A stretch of 56,832 bases of DNA, counting the filler, from Dugesia japonica (lineage: Eukaryota), in NCBI GenBank assembly GCA_001938525.1. It is 6 parts of 6 records of this genome, joined end to end, with 100 filler letters (N's around TTAATTAATTAA, not from the genome) between each part and the next. Parts side by side here need not be neighbours in the genome. Positions count along the whole stretch, not along the records: positions 48,006 to 56,832 come from MQRL01596182.1; 5 more parts are not named here. One strand, given 5' to 3'. Positions 48,006 to 56,832 of this stretch are shown here, piece by piece (position 1 is the stretch's first letter; each line of letters begins with the position of its first letter). Position numbers and translations under genes: made by a program. The notes beneath the pieces were generated by a model that ran no database searches, was not told the origin of the DNA, and saw nothing but the letters and a program-made list of their open reading frames with translations.

Positions 48006-48302
48006 TAATGAAATTTAATTTAAAAAATGAAAAAAACCGGAAAGAATATCTCAATAATTCCTCAAAAATAAAAATATGATGAAATATAATTTATCAAATA
48101 ATTCATTTGGAGCCTCTAAAGTCGTAGCTCTTGGTACAAACACTCCATCCGCTTCTCCATTAGCTACGGCATTGCATATGTTTGAAAACTTATTGATTAA
48201 ACCGGTATTCATTTCCGTTAAATATCAATTCACGAATATTACATAAACATTACGCAATATGTGGATATTTAAACTTTAAAAAACTAAAAAATTATATTAA
48301 TA

Positions 48303-48998
48303 ATGCAATTAGCAGAAAATTCAGGAAATTCAATCGAAAATTGTAACCTTTGCAACAAGTTAGCTACATCTCATTTATTATATTTAAATTGTCCACATGG
48401 ATACCATCATACTTGTCTATTCAATTATTTTATTCGAACTGGTAATTCATGCTGCCGAATTTGTTTAATTCCGGTAAAACGTTTTTCAACTCTTCTAGAC
48501 AATTCGCTGCTATGTGGATTATATTATAAAAATGAGCCTCGGTTATTTCAAGTTGGTTATAGTTATATACGAAATCTTAACAGTGTAGGGTATGCGTGTT
48601 TAATAGGTTTGTATAGAATCCAAACACCTTTGGGATTGAAAATAAAATTAATCAACACACCATTTAAAGAATATATTTATTTGTCAAATGAAAACGATCG
48701 TTTCAATATTTCTAAAGAAGCTTTCGAAATTTTAAAGTGTAAGAAGATAGAAATCAACATTCCGTACTCAAAGAACGAAAAAGCCCCTGAAAAAATGTAT
48801 GTTGATGTATTATGTCAACATAAATTCCTTTCTCTTCTTTGTAGAATTCCAATTAAAAACGGTCTACAAATAGATAAATTTCCAATAATTGATGAAATTC
48901 AATATATTGGAAAGAGACTTAATATGTCAGATGTCGGTTTGACGAAAACTGATAAACCCAAATTGAAAATTTCTTTAAGTAATAATTTATGGGCTTAA
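48303..48998 (+). CDS. Intronless RING-H2 finger protein with unrecognised C-terminal domain, paralogue 1
   Basis: Intact 231-aa ORF. C-x2-C-x12-C-x-H-x2-H-x2-C-x12-C-x2-C. Full-length similarity to 53144-53860. Confidence 0.85.
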   Translation: MQLAENSGNSIENCNLCNKLATSHLLYLNCPHGYHHTCLFNYFIRTGNSCCRICLIPVKRFSTLLDNSLLCGLYYKNEPRLFQVGYSYIRNLNSVGYACLIGLYRIQTPLGLKIKLINTPFKEYIYLSNENDRFNISKEAFEILKCKKIEINIPYSKNEKAPEKMYVDVLCQHKFLSLLCRIPIKNGLQIDKFPIIDEIQYIGKRLNMSDVGLTKTDKPKLKISLSNNLWA

Positions 48999-49958
48999 AA
49001 TTATTTTAAATAAAATTTTTTTGATTTATTAAATTACGCATTTTAATTTTTAATTAATTTTTTGTATACTTTTCAAAGTTTATTTAATATATTTATTTGT
49101 TATATTTTTTTAATGTTAACTTTGTAATTAAATAAAACTATAACAAAAATTTCAAAAAATTTTTTTAAAATATTGTAGTGAATTTTTCTATTGAAATCAA
49201 AATGAAAATTTTATCTAAATCAATTTAATAATTGTTTTAAGTTAAATAATATTTCAAATAAAAATTATTAAAAATTTAATAAAGTTAAGTTAAAGTTAAT
49301 GAATAAAAATTCTAAAATAAAAAGTAAAAACCATGTAAATTTTGAAAAAGAATAATAATTTAATAATAAATAATATAAATAAATATTATAAAATGAAAAT
49401 ATGTGAAGTAAATCTATTTTAAAATTATCAGTGATTATTATAATTTTTATTTATGTTTATATTTGACGACGATACAAATTTTAATTACGAATATATTTGA
49501 TTTAACTCGATTTTGTTTATTAGATAATATAATTTGGATAATTCACTCTATATATTGGATTTTATAAACTTTTGAAAATTTTTAAATACTTTATTTTTGA
49601 TTTATATTTTGATTTATTATGTATTCTGACTTTTTATCACCATTTTTAAACTCTCAAAAAGCGGTCTAATACGTCTCTAGTAACAGATCCTGATAAAAAA
49701 AACGTGTAAACTATATTATTCACAGTACTTGTTTAATTGATTTAAATAAATTTTTCTAAAAAGTAATTTTTTAACAATTAAGGAATACTATATAGTGTAC
49801 TTATACATATTATTTTATTTTTACTAAACATATTAAGGACCAAGGTAACATGTATAATATTAAGTTATCAGTTGGATTTCAATCTTCTTAAAAAATCAAA
49901 CTAAACTCACGATCTTGTTGACATCCCAAAGGCATCTCAACACAATCAGTACTTATAC

Positions 49959-50401
49959 CAGTGTTTCTAAATGTGGAGCCTACGCTCCACAGGTGGGCAA
50001 TTCGATTGCTCAAGGGGCAATTGAAAAACGAATTTTTAAAGAATGCAAATTTAACCATATGGCGACTCTAATTCATGTCTCAGGCTTAGTAAACAACCCG
50101 TATGGCGTGCAAATAACCTTTAGCCGCCATTTCAGTACTTCGGTCCAATTTTACTGAATATCTTACAGCGAATGACTCATCTTATAAGAGCAATGAAAGG
50201 ACATTATGAGGTGGCCGAGATGCATTCAGATAACTTCGATTTGCGATTTGCACATTTATCTGTCACTTCATCGTTTAGTTCTATAACTGATTTGATGCTT
50301 AAAAAAAGAAATCGTCTGGAAATAACAGACCGAAGTTAACAAAATTGGAGCCTAATATAAAATCTCTTTGAAACGAGCATCAAATGCAAGGATCTCACTA
50401 A
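49959..50401 (+). mobile_element. Buster/Charlie-type hAT deletion derivative
   Basis: Terminus CAGTGTTTCTAAA. Transposase C-terminus FSSITDLMLKKRNRLEI..LTKLEPNIKSL..HQMQGSH*. Confidence 0.7.
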
Positions 50402-51352
50402 AATAAATTAAAATAAATTCTTCTAATAATTACTAACAATTAAAATAATATTAAAAAATCTTACTTCTAAATGTTTTTGTACTTGATTACTTAAATATAT
50501 TGCGTTTGATTGAATTTTTATGTTTGTTTAATTACTTCCTTGTTATTTCGGTTGCTATTTTAATTAATAAAGTTTAGTTGTCTTTGAGTTATTTTAGTTT
50601 AAAATTGAAAGTCAAAAACGGACATAAAATTTTTGATCAATTAATAGCCTTTATTTAACAAGAAGTGGATTTTTTATGCCGAAAGAACTGTCATTGATGC
50701 TAAGATAGTTTTAAATATGCTATTCTTTCTCTTAACAATATGTATATGAGTGTTACAGTCAAAGTACGAATTCGGTAAATTCATAAATTTGTGTTTGTAT
50801 ATATTTATTTAAAGTATTAAATAAATGATAAAATGGAAAGAATGAGTAAATCAGGAATTTAAGGAAATATATCAGTGTATATATTTGTTAAAAACTTGTT
50901 TTATTCTGATTAGATCTAATTATTTTAATAAAAGTAATTCATAAAATTATTTATGAAACAGAGCTCTATTAGAATAAAAGTATGGATTAAAGTAAGCTTA
51001 AAATATAAATTTATAATATTCTTATTAAAATTTGAAAAATTCAAATTTAGAATACAGAGTCCGGACATAGGTTCTTAAAGTTATAACAAATATCACAATT
51101 TATGGCCTGTTTAATTATTTCTATTTTAAACATTTAAATGAATAAAATATAATTTGCAACTATGTTGTTTTAGATTTTGATCTTTTAAAGTGTAAAAAAT
51201 GTTTTTAGAACGAACTTTATATTTACTTTTAAAACAAATTTATTTTAGAAAATATTTCTTTATATACAGTAATTCCATCGTTCACGTTACCTTACAAATG
51301 AATTGAAATAGTAATTATTTGATTCAAGAAAGAAATTATAATTATGTAGCTA

Positions 51353-51512
51353 CACTCATCCCTCGCTTTACGAAATGGTTCCGTTCCCGAAAAGTTGTCC
51401 CTAAATCCAATTTTTTACGTACATAAAAACCATTTTATATGTACTATAGCAGAAACAATGGTTTTATTTTTCAATTCCGTATAAAGAGTTCCCGTAAAGC
51501 GAGGGATGAGTG
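51353..51512 (+). mobile_element. Pogo/Tigger-like MITE (160 bp)
   Basis: Perfect 20-bp TIR CACTCATCCCTCGCTTTACG with TA on both flanks. Confidence 0.92.
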
Positions 51513-53143
51513 TACTTATAAATTATAAAGAATACGATATATTGTATTATTCTAGTTTATTTATAATGTGTTAAATAAGAAAATAAATCCATCTATAACA
51601 ATATGTTGAGATTACAGATACACAAAAAAACAAAACATACACATACATAAATCATTGTTAATCAAATCATCAACGAGCAAATACGACCAATTATTCTCAA
51701 TATCAACCCTCAAATGGATCCTTCAACCACAATTTAACCGACATTTAGTTTATCAGACAATTATTTGTTTTAGACTTCATAATTGATATTTCGACTTCAT
51801 TATTGATATTTTAATTTATTTCATTTCATTTTCATTAATTATGTATAAAGTTATTTTGAAGGAATTTTTAGTTAATATTGCTATGTATTGATTTTATTTT
51901 AATTGAGTTTATTTTTATGTTGACTTTATTTTATCAAGAAATATTGCAATCTGTTTGCAATCTGTTTAATAAATCGATTAATCTGTTCAATTTATGCACA
52001 TACTTGGGAATTATTATATAGTTTGGATTATTGATTATGGAAAATTAAATTATTTGAAAAAGTAAATTTTANTTATTTTTGTATGGTGTTGTTATTTTTA
52101 TTGGTTAAAGATGTTCTGCATGCGAGTGAAATCAGTATAAATACTGACTGATTTCACTCAGTTTTCAGACTTTCAATTAGCACCCAACCTCTTTGGATGG
52201 CATCGCTAATCTGAATTAAAATTTTGCTAATAAGTTTTTATAGTTTTTAGTAACCTGTAGTTATTATCTGTTATACATAAAAAATAAACTATTAAAAGGT
52301 AGTTATTGGTTATTTATATAAGACAAATACACTATATAACTATATCTATAATTTTCGATAAAATATCATCTATATAATATCGTATTGACATATCAAAGGA
52401 AAATCAACACCAATAAATTTACTAACGTACTTTAAGTCAATAGTTTTAAAATAACGAACCGTAAATTAACTTGTTGAGTAGAAATACCCAACAAATATTA
52501 TATAGATACTAGTCAATCTATACATGAAAAGTAAGAATTCAATGTGTATATTATTAATATATAATTATTATTATTATTATGTGATACACGAAATTTGATA
52601 ATTTGTTATGAAAATAATGAAAAGTTTTTTTAATATATACGATGTAAAAAATTAAAAAACATTGGCAAATTTTTCAGAAAAATAAGAGAAAGCCATTTAA
52701 CAAAATATTTATTTGCAATTAATACCGAATGGGTGCAATGTCACATAGATTGAAGAACTTCTTGTCATCTCTACAGAAGAGTCGAAATAGTTATATTGTT
52801 GAACATCGTAGAAAATGTATAAATTCAATAGGGTTTATGATTTAAAATTGTGTGAAGTGGATTTAATAATTATTGGGAGAAAGTGATGTGTNNNNNNNNN
52901 NNNNNNNNNNNNNNNNNNNNNNNNNNNNNNNNNNNNNNNNNNNNNNNNNNNNNNCTCTTAAAATTATTTTATTGATTATTTATTGGGATTGCACAATTGA
53001 AGTTGAGTAATCATTTTTAACTTTATAAATAGTATTTTTTAATTATTTTTTAGATGACGGTTATTCCGTCGAAATTAATTAAAACTAATTAATTCTCTTA
53101 TTTTTATTAATATATTTCTAATTTTAACATATCATAATAACAA

Positions 53144-53860
53144 TCAGCTGTAAATATCTCGACAAAATAATTTACTTTTCAAAACTATATTTGATTTCAT
53201 GGTTTTGTAATTTGTAGTCGAAGAAAACCAATAAAGTTTTCTACCAAATTCTCTAATTTCATTGAAAAATGGGAAATCATTGTAGCAAAATCCGTTCCTA
53301 GTTAAAATCGTACAACACACCACGAGTACATTCAATTTATTTATAATTTCTACTTTCATGTCTGTAATATGACCATTCGATATTGATGATCGAGACAAAT
53401 TCATTGGAATGAACACTTTTAATTTCTTACAGGATAAATCTCTGCATTGTTTCTTTGTGATTTGCATATGATTATTTTCATTTGGTATTGTGACAAACTT
53501 TTTTATTAGACTACCTTTCAGTGTAATTTTTAATGCTACAGGAAAATTTATTTCATATAAGCCTATTAAACAAATAAAACCGTCAACACGACATTTGTCT
53601 ATGTAAGAATATCCAATTTGAAATAGGGTTTTTTGATTACTACAAAATATTTTGCAGAGTTTATTGTCTACAAATAAATGCAATTTTCTCCACAGAGATG
53701 CACATATAGGGCAATTTTGTGATTTGTGTTCAATTGTGTAATTGATAAGACAAACATGGTGGAATTTATGCTCACACGAAATCTCTGCTAACTTCTCATT
53801 ACCTAGTAAACAAATTGAACATTTTTCAGACTTTCTCAACGAATTTTTCAGTCTTTCCAT
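53144..53860 (-). CDS. Intronless RING-H2 finger protein with unrecognised C-terminal domain, paralogue 2
   Basis: Intact 238-aa ORF. C-x2-C-x11-C-x-H-x2-H-x2-C-x12-C-x2-C. Shares LFQ(V/I)GYSYI, CLIGLY, NEN, CKK and FPxxxEIxxxGxxL with paralogue 1. Confidence 0.85.
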   Translation of the reverse strand: MERLKNSLRKSEKCSICLLGNEKLAEISCEHKFHHVCLINYTIEHKSQNCPICASLWRKLHLFVDNKLCKIFCSNQKTLFQIGYSYIDKCRVDGFICLIGLYEINFPVALKITLKGSLIKKFVTIPNENNHMQITKKQCRDLSCKKLKVFIPMNLSRSSISNGHITDMKVEIINKLNVLVVCCTILTRNGFCYNDFPFFNEIREFGRKLYWFSSTTNYKTMKSNIVLKSKLFCRDIYS

Positions 53861-54089
53861 ATTGTTAACAAAAATTATGTTTAAATAATTTAAATGTGGC
53901 TTATAATTAATGAGATTATGTAATTATCACGTAAGATTAGGTAACTTAATGTAGGAAAATTTACACAAATTTTATTTTATCTGTTTACAATTTCATAAAA
54001 TTAAAATTTTGCAAAATTAAAAATTTTAATTGCAAAATTAAAAATTATTTCAATAATAATATAAACTTAATTTAAAAAAAAAAATCTTC

Positions 54090-54185
54090 GATCAAAATTT
54101 GTTTTTTTGGTTGTTGATAGTCAATTCTTGACGAAGACAAAGTCGAAATATAGAATTATCAAAAGCCAAAAAACAAATTTTGATC
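54090..54185 (+). ncRNA. Long hairpin whose loop is a hammerhead-ribozyme-like core
   Basis: Arms GATCAAAATTTGTTTTTTTGG..TTGATA..AATTC and GAATTATCAA..CCAAAAAACAAATTTTGATC enclose TTGACGA-A-GAC-AAA-GTC-GAAA-TA-TA. Confidence 0.5.
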
Positions 54186-56796
54186 AAAGCATTTATTTTA
54201 AATGAATTCTGAAAAACGATCAATGGTTATGTCCAACAATTATTCTCGCAATAATTGCAATTCTGAAACAATATAAACTTCATTAAAAACATTTGAAATT
54301 TGGCAAATTTTGAAATCTCGGAAATAATTTTAAAACTCATAATAGTGAAATTGACGATTTGATTTTGAAGTTCAATAATAATAACAAAAAAATTTTAATT
54401 TTTTTAATAGATAAAATCCAGGAAAATTTCAAAATTTAAAAGATCTATATTTGAATGAATTTAAATTAGTTAAAAAGTTAAAAAACCAACAAAATCTCAA
54501 AAAACTAAGAAATAATCGAGAAATAAATTAAATATAATTTTCTACATCTATATGTAGGTGAATTTGTCTGTAACGTTCGAGTTAAAAAGGTTAATAATAA
54601 ATATTACAGAGTGCATACAAAGTTAATTTCATGCAAATTTTAATTTATATAAAAAATTAATGCTGTTGGGCTCCAAGGTCTTTTCTGCTATCTTTCTTTC
54701 TTTTAATACTCTTGTCATCTTTCTGTCTTGATGATTGATTTCGCGTCTGGTGTATGATACCGAGGAACCGCAAAAATTTTATGTTTTCTAGAACAATAAC
54801 TCCCATCATTACCGGATTCAGCGGGACTACGCGGTATCTCGTCTTATGAATCTCAGTTTGTTATTCGACTTCACTTAGTAGATCCTCTACTCATTATTTT
54901 CACTCAATAACACTACGATATTACCTTTCAAGTAATGAGAACTCGGGTGGATTTTATAGATTTATTAACATAAAATTCTTTTCGTTCATTGATTTCACTT
55001 TTTAATCTAACACATCAACTTTCCATGATGGCACTATCTTCTTCAGGTGCCGACTTCTTGAGGTTGTAAACCTATACAAGCACTTCAAATTTGCCAATAC
55101 TGATGCTTTTCGTTCCGATTATCCACGAATAAATCCGCTAGAATATCCAAAAAATCCGGTTTATCTGGAATTATGCGAATTCTCGCTCTCAGCTTATATT
55201 TTTCTATACAGTTTATATACATTTCCTCATTTTTGTTTAATTTAATTGCCGCATTATTTTCTTTTGTTATTATTAATACTTTTGTTTCAATTTTAGCTTT
55301 ATCCGTTTCCGCCCTACAATGCAATTAAAATTTTTGAAGATATGACTGAGTAAAAATGTCATTAACACTTTTTGTGTAAATTAAGCTTTTATAAATTATA
55401 TATAAATTATATAAATTATATATCGAAAATTTTTATAAATTTAACCGAGCTTCCAATTCGTATTAAAAATAGTGCACCGACAAATAAACTGGTGCTAGTT
55501 TAAAAATTTGGCTCACTTGGCACAACCCTTATATATAGTGGTGAAACAACCGAATAAGAACCAAGAAACCCGAGGGCCCCAGAAATAGATCAACCAGCGT
55601 ATCCAATTAGAAATAATCATAAGATTAATTAATGAGGAAATAAATTTAAATTATTAATAACTAAAATTAGGTCAGAAATAAATCGGAAGTAATAGAATTA
55701 CAAGAAGAAATAATGGAATCAGAAAGAAAAATACCTGTCAGAATGAAATAGTTAATTAATTAACAAATTAATTAAGATATAAAATATTTTATAACAATAT
55801 TGAAATAATTGATTATTAGCGGAAATGGAATTAATTAGTTTAAAAACTCACAAAGGCTTTAACTTTTAATGAAAACACCAAAAAATCAAACGGTAAGAAA
55901 ATTCAAATAGTTAAAATGAAAAAAAACATTTTGGTCTAAAAAACAACATCAAAATCCTTGATAAGAAGGAACAAAGAGCAAGCAAAGATGAACCAGTGAG
56001 AAACATCAGGTGACATCATGCGATATCAAGCCACATAAGCTGATATATAAAGAACCAAACAGGCGAGGATGCAAAAATAATCCCAGATAAACATAGAGAA
56101 ATGATCGAAAGATACCAATGGGCCAAGTAGAAATGCGGTGGTCTTAAGATGAAATATTATAAAAACCCAGAAAATTTTAGATAATTTTGATTTTATATCA
56201 AAACAAATTTAGAAATTAGTTAATCATAGCAAATTAATACAAATCTTTGCGGAAAATCCTTATGTTACAGATAATTACAAGTAAATGCATTTCGATTTCA
56301 CATATGGAACTGTATATATTTTATAATATACATAATATATTTTCTCAATATTTTTGTTACTTTTATTAACATTGGGTGATGGTTTAAATTATTTTATTTT
56401 ATCTAGAAATTTTATTTAGTAGTTGACCCTAATGTAATAAACTAAACTCCTCAACCAACTCAAACTATATCTAATAAGAAAGGTGAGATATAAATAAATA
56501 ACATACCAGAAAAAAAATATTTATTTCTACTACAAAAAGAGAAATATCTTTAGGTGATCCACGGTAAACTTTCCACAAAGCATCGATAAAATTACTGACG
56601 AAAACGATTAATTTCATAATATAAAAGTTCAATAATATTTTGCTGAAATTTTACCCAGAATAAGAAATTACAAACTTAATTTACAGCAATCCACATCACT
56701 GGCATGTAAGCACAACTCCCCCCTGAGTAGTTACAGTAAAGAAAAATTAATTAATCGAGAAATATAATCAACCATAATTAATTATTAACCGTTATT

Positions 56797-56799
56797 ATG

Positions 56800-56832
<33 letters not shown>
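56797..56832. repeat. (TTA)n microsatellite
   Basis: Run of ATT units to the window end. Confidence 0.9.

What the first reader, a model, noticed from the sequence alone, without database searches (positions are those of the whole stretch)
48303..53860. Pair of intact, intronless, diverged RING-H2 genes with a shared unknown domain of about 170 aa
Seen: two convergent ORFs about 4.1 kb apart (231 and 238 aa) are the only long intact ORFs I can support in this transposon-rich window. Both have an N-terminal RING-H2 and conserved blocks LFQ(V/I)GYSYI, G(Y/F)xCLIGLY, LKIxL, NEN, CKK, NG and FPxxxEIxxxGxxL. They have no introns, whereas the synaptogyrin gene has frequent tiny ones. Established: RING-H2 domains are usually E3 ubiquitin ligases. 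Inference: a lineage-specific, possibly retroposed or virus-derived, fast-evolving E3 family with a novel substrate-binding domain, perhaps acting in defence or as an effector.
Basis: partly seen in the sequence, partly recalled or inferred. Interest (0 to 1): 0.72.

Follow-up and report, generated by a model that had tools for sequence, protein, structure and literature searches.

The report
Orphan RING-H2 gene pair, unknown C-domain
Two intact, intronless, highly diverged sister genes encode small zinc-finger (RING-H2) proteins, probably ubiquitin ligases, whose 170-residue second half matches no known protein domain or fold; the family is tiny and unannotated, and no transcripts were seen.

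Summary
ORF1 (48303-48998, +, 231 aa) and ORF2 (53144-53860, -, 238 aa) are convergent and by far the longest ORFs in the piece. Shuffled sequence gave at most 143 aa. They are 34% identical (E 1e-39). The assembly gap at 52892-52954 lies 189 nt beyond ORF2's stop, so it touches neither frame.

Both carry a complete C3H2C3 RING-H2. A family profile of it matches solved E3 RINGs (Arkadia, E 3e-8).

The C-terminal ~170 aa is a real conserved domain. A profile search of 1.84 billion representative proteins found only five relatives. All come from unannotated metagenome or SRA contigs, and every complete one carries an N-terminal RING-H2 ahead of the domain. Some sit in head-to-tail tandem units of 2.4-2.75 kb.

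Retroposed or viral origin has no support. Three RNA-seq runs gave essentially no reads on either ORF.

Best reading: a lineage-restricted family of soluble single-subunit RING E3 ligases with a new substrate-binding module. E3 activity and biological role are inferred.

The parts
48303..48998 (+). ORF1: complete single-exon CDS, 231 aa, stop TAA. Predicted soluble basic protein (pI 9.1) with no signal peptide or TM segment.
   Evidence: GC 0.29 against 0.23 in the intergenic DNA
48342..48464 (+). ORF1 RING-H2, residues 14-54. Ligands are C14, C17, C30, H32, H35, C38, C51 and C54. The usual Pro of the last CPxC pair is Arg here (CRIC).
   Evidence: Pfam scores are below cutoff for ORF1 alone (zf-C3HC4 17.4 bits against a cutoff of 21). 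The family profile matches solved RING E3s.
48474..48995 (+). ORF1 C-terminal conserved domain, residues 58-231, of unknown family
53144..53860 (-). ORF2: complete single-exon CDS, 238 aa, stop TGA. Predicted soluble basic protein (pI 9.4).
53702..53821 (-). ORF2 RING-H2, residues 14-53. Ligands are C14, C17, C29, H31, H34, C37, C50 and C53. It keeps Ile16, Tyr41 (at the usual Trp position) and Pro51 at the usual E2-contact positions.
   Evidence: (zf-RING_2 27.3 bits, equal to the cutoff; zf-C3HC4 23.6 bits against 21)
53147..53692 (-). ORF2 C-terminal conserved domain, residues 57-238. The AlphaFold model has about 11 beta strands and a C-terminal helix (model residues 141-156). The last ~25 residues are unmodelled but carry a conserved PK..I.L.K.LF-like tail motif.
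   Evidence: (pLDDT 73.2, pTM 0.71)
52892..52954 (.). Assembly gap (N, length estimated) in the intergenic region, 189 nt 3' of ORF2's stop. It is not part of either gene and was left unfilled.

Best explanation
ORF1 and ORF2 are two functional, single-exon, anciently duplicated paralogues. They belong to a small, lineage-restricted and so far unannotated eukaryotic gene family, probably from an arthropod-like invertebrate. Each encodes a soluble, basic protein of about 27 kDa with two modules: an N-terminal RING-H2 zinc finger and a beta-rich C-terminal domain of about 170 residues that has no detectable relative.

The most likely mechanism is that of a single-subunit RING E3 ubiquitin ligase. 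The RING would dock a ubiquitin-charged E2, and the C-terminal domain would bind the substrate and present it for ubiquitin transfer.

What is shown: the ORFs are intact, all eight zinc ligands are conserved in every member, the RING is homologous to active E3 RINGs, the C-domain is conserved, the family is tiny, and relatives show tandem amplification.

What is inferred: E3 activity, substrate binding by the C-domain, and the organismal role. Expression, if any, must be restricted, because bulk RNA-seq showed none.
For: ORF length is far beyond chance: 231 and 238 aa, against a maximum of 143 aa in 300 shuffles.

The two proteins are 34% identical, E 1e-39. Synonymous sites are saturated, yet all six full-length family members keep open frames with aligned starts and stops, and pN is below pS in all 15 pairs. 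Neutral decay would have broken these frames.

All eight RING-H2 ligands are invariant across seven RING copies. The family RING profile hits Arkadia (E 3.3e-8), RING1B, synoviolin, RNF165, RLIM, AMFR and RNF38, all E3 ligases. ORF2 reaches the Pfam zf-RING_2 and zf-C3HC4 cutoffs.

The exhaustive profile search with the C-domain returned five true relatives (E 2.5e-28 to 3e-4). Every complete one has an N-terminal RING-H2 followed by this domain. The two modules are therefore a conserved architecture.

The C-domain folds to a confident core: pLDDT 73, pTM 0.71, with blocks at 82-94.

There is no TM segment or signal peptide.

Relatives occur as tandem units. In L003 the second copy starts 2398 nt after the first, with 96.8% identity over the 283-nt overlap. 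L001 and L002 are rotations of one 2752-nt unit. None of the 12 differences between L001 and L002 fall in the ORF.
Against: No expression was seen. Three raw RNA-seq runs, sampled at 6-25% of each, and one probable-RNA contig set gave essentially zero depth on both ORFs, while intergenic repeats were covered.

ORF1's RING scores below Pfam cutoffs on its own and has Arg in place of the Pro in the last CPxC pair. The aromatic residue at the canonical Trp position is not conserved across the family, and no member has the linchpin Arg after the last Cys. Some or all members could therefore be weak or inactive E3s.

The role of the C-domain is inferred only from architecture. The model rests on a seven-sequence alignment.

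The source organism is coded, so family size in this genome is unknown.
Confidence: 0.6

Rival explanations
1. The genes derive from, or are carried by, a large DNA virus or another mobile element (an endogenous viral element or transposon cargo). The RING protein would originally have acted to manipulate host ubiquitination.
For: The genes are intronless and AT-rich, and no expression was seen. The nearest ESM-Atlas neighbours of ORF2 are RING-protein clusters of Nucleocytoviricota, but at 0.86, below the 0.9 level the tool treats as meaningful, and they reflect only the RING. One relative assembles as a 2752-nt circle-like unit.
Against: The C-domain has no viral homologue among 1.84 billion representative proteins, in IMG/VR, or by fold in BFVD. 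There are no other viral or transposon genes in the piece: ten other stop-free segments gave no significant Pfam hit (best E 0.03, below the cutoff). No TIRs, LTRs or shared flanks surround the two ORFs. Coding density is low, with 2 genes in 8.8 kb. In L003 the unit is clearly a head-to-tail tandem with diverged copies, not a circle. L001 carries no Rep-like ORF.
Confidence: 0.12
2. The genes are real and conserved, but the RING is a structural zinc module or protein-interaction domain without ligase activity (a pseudo-E3). The protein would act as an adaptor, inhibitor or nucleic-acid binder through its basic C-domain.
For: Several E2-contact features are only partly kept. The Trp-position residue varies (Y, Y, F, A, V, D, N), no member has a linchpin Arg, and ORF1 has CRIC instead of CPxC. 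The proteins are basic, pI 9.1-9.4.
Against: All eight ligands and the hydrophobic residue after the first Cys are kept, and CPxC is present in 6 of 7 RING copies. The best profile matches are to catalytically active RING-H2 domains. Many active RINGs lack the linchpin.
Confidence: 0.18
3. The ORFs are recently dead or never-functional sequence (pseudogenes or chance ORFs), and the family resemblance is a relic.
For: RNA-seq gave no support. Neither protein is present in the 15-billion-protein collection. One relative, L007, carries a frameshift in an A-run compared with the otherwise 99.9% identical L004.
Against: ORF length is far beyond chance. Six intact full-length members persist despite saturated synonymous divergence, with pN below pS and invariant zinc ligands. 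The L007 frameshift sits in an A7/A6 homopolymer, which is consistent with an assembly error.
Confidence: 0.07

Closest known systems
RING-H2 E3 ubiquitin ligases of the Arkadia/RNF165/RNF38/RLIM type (Pfam zf-RING_2, PF13639)
   Same: They share the C3H2C3 ligand pattern and spacing, the CxHxFHxxC core, the hydrophobic residue after the first Cys, and mostly the CPxC pair. The family profile matches them at E 3e-8 to 1e-4.
   Different: Here the RING is N-terminal, in a protein of about 235 aa. In those proteins it is C-terminal, in large proteins. The linchpin Arg is absent and the Trp position is not conserved. Nothing outside the RING is shared.
SIAH / TRAF-type E3s (N-terminal RING followed by a beta-sandwich substrate-binding domain)
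   Same: The overall logic is the same: a small N-terminal RING followed by a beta-rich C-terminal recognition domain. The TRAF6 RING is a weak sequence hit (E 7e-4).
   Different: There are no intervening zinc fingers or coiled coil. No MATH/TRAF-C or SIAH domain appeared among the listed top fold matches (top 50 shown per search) in PDB or in Pfam.
RING-finger proteins of large DNA viruses (Nucleocytoviricota, baculovirus and entomopox RING proteins)
   Same: They are also small, intronless, AT-rich RING proteins with otherwise unannotated remainders. They are the nearest language-model neighbours (0.86).
   Different: The similarity is limited to the generic RING and falls below the tool's trust level. 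The C-domain was absent from the viral collections searched.

Membership tests
RING-H2 zinc finger (C3H2C3) | Eight zinc ligands in the order C-C-C-H-H-C-C-C with spacing C-x2-C-x(9-39)-C-x(1-3)-H-x(2-3)-H-x2-C-x(4-48)-C-x2-C | tested here: met
   ORF2 has C14, C17, C29, H31, H34, C37, C50 and C53. ORF1 has C14, C17, C30, H32, H35, C38, C51 and C54. These positions are invariant in all 7 RING copies of the family.
RING-H2 zinc finger (C3H2C3) | Score at or above the curated Pfam cutoff for a RING model | tested here: inconclusive
   ORF2 scores 27.3 bits on zf-RING_2 (equal to the cutoff) and 23.6 bits on zf-C3HC4 (cutoff 21). ORF1 scores 17.4 and 11.7 bits, below the cutoffs. The family profile hits solved RING E3s at E 3.3e-8.
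Active RING E3 ubiquitin ligase | E2-contact residues: a hydrophobic residue after Cys1, an aromatic or Trp on the central helix, and the Pro of the last CPxC pair; plus a linchpin Arg/Lys after the last Cys | tested here: inconclusive
   The hydrophobic residue after Cys1 is kept in all copies. CPxC is present in 6 of 7 copies, with ORF1 having CRIC. The Trp-position residue is Y, Y, F, A, V, D or N. No copy has a linchpin Arg.
Active RING E3 ubiquitin ligase | E2-dependent ubiquitin transfer | not testable with these tools
   This needs an in vitro ubiquitination assay.
Retrogene / endogenous viral element | Hallmarks of insertion (poly-A tail, target-site duplications) or linked viral or transposon genes, and a parental or viral homologue | tested here: not met
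   No flanking direct or inverted repeats rise above AT-rich chance matches. Neighbouring segments have no significant Pfam domains (best E 0.03, below cutoff). No viral homologue was found. No intron-bearing parent gene is known. A whole-genome search was not possible.

The most novel reading that the evidence does not exclude
The C-terminal domain is a new protein fold that serves as the target-recognition module of a tandemly amplifying, rapidly diversifying family of small RING E3 ligases. The family would be confined to one invertebrate (arthropod-like) lineage and engaged in a genetic conflict. Candidates are restriction of viruses or transposons in the manner of TRIM5, or germline or meiotic-drive ampliconic genes in the manner of Stellate. 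The second case would explain both the near-identical head-to-tail arrays in relatives and the absence of transcripts from bulk RNA-seq.
Probability: 0.15. Interest if true: 0.65.

Novelty: new variant of a known kind. Interest (0 to 1): 0.4.

Why it matters
RING E3 ligases get their specificity from the domain attached to the RING. Here that domain is conserved in a handful of proteins, absent from every annotated proteome searched (1.84 billion representatives), and has no recognisable fold. If the proteins are active, this is a new substrate-recognition module. The tandem amplification in relatives also hints at a conflict-driven gene family.

In practice, these are unannotated single-exon genes that standard pipelines have missed in an AT-rich genome. 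The significance is limited by three things: no evidence of expression, no evidence of activity, and the fact that lineage-specific 'RING plus unknown' orphans are common in eukaryotic genomes.

Tried and rejected
- Word-indexed protein searches added no new members. ORF2 alone gave none. The family alignment gave only P0004 and P0006 again.
- The JGI metagenome scan returned only generic RING matches to residues about 1-67, with no C-domain. The IMG/VR scan gave nothing.
- P0005 (1154 aa) from the exhaustive search is spurious. It is a short motif in a 10-fold tandem-repeat translation.
- The first AlphaFold run, on a 2-sequence alignment, was useless (pLDDT 31). Only the 7-sequence C-domain run was usable.
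- hhalign between thirds of the C-domain showed no internal repeat. The only 'hits' were the 7 overlapping columns I had included.
- Rfam and tRNA scans of the piece were empty.
- The other stop-free segments of the piece gave no significant Pfam match (best E 0.03, below the cutoff). I had guessed that 48054-48224(-) might be an isocitrate-lyase/PEP-mutase-like exon. That guess was not supported.
- A paper search for the four sample accessions found nothing.
- The organism stayed coded, so I could not name the species.
- Read laying printed letters from repeat-derived contigs that bridge the assembly gap. I did not use them, and the gap is left as N.
- I sent no complex-prediction job, because no specific binding pair is claimed.
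Full report
**1. The observation**

Only window 48006-56832 is real sequence. It is very AT-rich, with GC between 0.11 and 0.35 and mostly near 0.25.

The ORF listing finds two outstanding ORFs:
- ORF1: 48303-48998, + strand, 231 aa.
- ORF2: 53144-53860, - strand, 238 aa.

The next longest ORF is 80 aa. In 300 shuffles of the piece, the longest ATG-ORF had a median of 65 aa and never exceeded 143 aa. Two ORFs above 230 aa are therefore not chance.

The ORFs are convergent (tail to tail). ORF1 stops with TAA and ORF2 with TGA.

The flagged assembly gap at 52892-52954 lies in the intergenic region, 189 nt beyond ORF2's stop. A single N stands at 52072. Neither touches a reading frame. The only consequence is that the 4.1-kb spacing is approximate. 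I left the gap unfilled.

**2. Paralogy and gene integrity**

BLASTP between the two proteins gives 34% identity over 211 residues, E 1e-39.

At the DNA level the two loci share nothing outside the coding sequence. No LTRs, TIRs or direct repeats frame either ORF; only AT-rich chance matches appear.

The ORFs are slightly more GC-rich (0.29) than the intergenic DNA (0.23).

A Nei-Gojobori count shows pS of 0.63 to 0.83, which is saturated. pN is lower in all 15 pairs among six full-length family members. All six keep open frames, and their start Met and stop align. This is hard to reconcile with neutral decay, so I take both ORFs as genes that have been under protein-level constraint. They are complete in one exon.

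**3. The RING**

Both proteins carry the full C3H2C3 pattern.
- ORF2 ligands: C14, C17, C29, H31, H34, C37, C50, C53.
- ORF1 ligands: C14, C17, C30, H32, H35, C38, C51, C54.

In Pfam, ORF2 reaches zf-RING_2 (27.3 bits, equal to the cutoff) and zf-C3HC4 (23.6 bits against a cutoff of 21). ORF1 alone is sub-threshold.

A profile of seven RING copies from the family has all eight ligands invariant. It matches solved E3 RING domains:
- Arkadia at E 3.3e-8
- RING1B
- synoviolin
- RNF165
- RLIM
- AMFR
- ZNRF3
- RNF38

The E2-contact features are only partly kept:
- The hydrophobic residue after Cys1 is always present.
- CPxC is present in 6 of 7 copies. ORF1 has CRIC.
- The Trp-position residue varies.
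- There is no linchpin Arg.

RING homology is therefore solid. E3 activity is probable but unproven.

**4. The C-terminal domain and the family**

I ran an exhaustive HMMER search with the ORF1/ORF2 C-domain profile against 1.84 billion representative proteins. It returned six hits. One, P0005, is a tandem-repeat artefact.

The five true relatives are:

| Protein | Length | E-value |
|---|---|---|
| P0001 | 310 aa | 2.5e-28 |
| P0002 (its 232-aa cluster mate is P0007) | 151 aa | 4.8e-17 |
| P0003 (fragment) | 124 aa | 1.9e-14 |
| P0004 | 227 aa | 3.5e-09 |
| P0006 | 238 aa | 3.1e-04 |

All come from unnamed Logan or ENA metagenome-type assemblies. Every complete one has an N-terminal RING-H2 followed by this domain. 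P0001 has two RINGs, from an internal 221-nt duplication at 83% identity.

Neither ORF1 nor ORF2 is itself in the 15-billion-protein collection. They are unannotated there.

Other searches found no further members:
- Word-based searches added none.
- JGI metagenomes gave only generic RING hits.
- IMG/VR gave nothing.

Pfam on all seven C-domains gave only three unrelated single-member hits at E 0.05-0.1. A PDB profile search gave nothing, with a best E of 0.31.

**5. Fold**

With only two sequences AlphaFold failed (pLDDT 31). With the seven-sequence C-domain alignment it gave a usable model, with mean pLDDT 73.2 and pTM 0.71. Core blocks score 82-94. The model has about eleven beta strands, two short helices and a C-terminal helix. 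The last ~25 residues are disordered, although they carry a conserved PK..I.L.K.LF-like motif.

| Search | Best result |
|---|---|
| Foldseek vs PDB | E 0.17 |
| ESM Atlas | TM 0.39 or less |
| BFVD viral models | E 0.047, TM 0.32 or less |

I do not claim a new fold. The model rests on seven sequences, and the tools warn that weak matches do not prove novelty.

No internal repeat was detected. There is no TM segment or signal peptide, and pI is 9.1-9.4.

**6. Context in relatives**

- L001 (2893 nt, megahit k141) has a 141-nt terminal overlap and is a rotation of L002 (2751 nt, another assembly). Together they imply a 2752-nt circular path with one ORF.
- L003 runs from one copy into the next, 2398 nt later, with 96.8% identity over the 283-nt overlap. 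Head-to-tail tandem arrays are therefore the simpler reading.
- The 12 differences between L001 and L002 all lie outside the ORF. The chance of that is about 0.03, from my own arithmetic.
- Single samples hold at least two diverged paralogues. P0004 and P0006 come from one sample, and P0001 and P0003 from another.
- Downstream of the gene in L004 and L007 is a fragment whose nearest ESM-Atlas clusters are arthropod mariner/SETMAR/DDE_3-like fragments (score 0.92, 180 shared features). Pfam did not confirm this. It is a lead that the family lives in arthropod-like genomes, not a finding.
- L007 differs from L004 only by an A7/A6 run that breaks the frame. This could be an assembly error or a null allele.

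**7. Expression**

The species has RNA runs. I laid three raw RNA-seq runs from three studies, sampled at 6-25% of each, plus one probable-RNA contig set on 48200-53950. Depth on both ORFs was essentially nil.

The only exceptions were a few partial reads, and low coverage (depth about 3) of ORF1's 3' end in the contig set. That set's RNA status is itself a guess.

Several intergenic stretches were covered at 95-99% identity, at contig depths up to 1852. These were 49928-50311, 50504-50695, 52040-52231 and 52808-53191, and they behave as dispersed repeats.

Expression in those samples is therefore very low or absent. This does not prove silence, because the tissues and stages are unknown.

**8. 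Interpretation**

Best reading (0.6): a lineage-restricted family of soluble, single-subunit RING-H2 E3 ligases. The RING recruits E2~Ub, and the new beta-rich domain selects the substrate.

| Rival | Weight |
|---|---|
| RING retained as a non-catalytic module | 0.18 |
| Viral or mobile-element origin | 0.12 |
| Dead or never-functional sequence | 0.07 |

The viral or retroposed idea has no positive evidence beyond the lack of introns and a sub-threshold language-model resemblance of the RING to giant-virus RING proteins.

**9. Novelty and score**

The RING is ordinary. The architecture, a small N-terminal RING-H2 plus this conserved unassigned domain, is not in Pfam, PDB or any annotated proteome searched. 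I rate it a new variant of a known kind.

Orphan 'RING plus unknown' families are common in eukaryotes, and expression is unproven. Interest is therefore moderate (0.4).

The most novel reading still allowed is a new recognition fold in a conflict-driven, tandemly amplifying E3 family. I give it about 0.15.

Noticed in passing
window 49928-50311, 50504-50695, 52040-52231, 52808-53191: These intergenic stretches are covered by RNA reads and contigs at 95-99% identity, with very high contig depth (up to 1852), while the ORFs are not. They behave as transcribed dispersed repeats. The assembly gap at 52892-52954 sits inside the most abundant one. No Pfam or Rfam match was found.
   Followed up: partly
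L001 1-2893 and L002 1-2751: Two independent assemblies give rotated versions of the same 2752-nt unit carrying one family gene (P0006). L001 has a 141-nt terminal overlap equal to the assembler's k. This is either a tandem array of identical units or a small circular DNA. No Rep-like ORF is present.
   Followed up: partly
L003 1-283 vs 2399-2681: Head-to-tail tandem duplication of the P0004 gene with a 2398-nt period. The neighbouring copies are 96.8% identical over the 283-nt overlap and differ by one amino acid in the first 38 codons.
   Followed up: yes
L005 102-322 vs 336-556: P0001 carries two RING-H2 domains, produced by an internal 221-nt duplication at 83% identity.
   Followed up: yes
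L004 1084-1251 (= L007 845-1012): About 55 nt downstream of the family gene lies a fragment resembling the C-terminal end of a mariner/DDE_3-type transposase. Its nearest ESM-Atlas clusters are arthropod (0.92), and there is no Pfam hit. This is a taxonomic lead for the relatives.
   Followed up: partly
L007 about 542 vs L004 about 780: The L007 copy differs from L004 (otherwise 99.9% identical) by one A in an A7/A6 run, which splits the gene into 151-aa and 86-aa calls. This is either a null allele or a homopolymer assembly error.
   Followed up: yes
window 56792-56832 and 52549-52580; L003 1130-1180 and 2219-2257: (TTA)n-type microsatellites, one running into the end of the piece. They account for all of the DNA 'similarity' between the window and L003.
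   Followed up: yes
window 48054-48243: At the left edge of the piece both strands are open for about 57-62 codons, with raised GC (0.31). This may be an exon of a neighbouring gene cut by the piece's edge. No Pfam match was found on either strand.
   Followed up: partly
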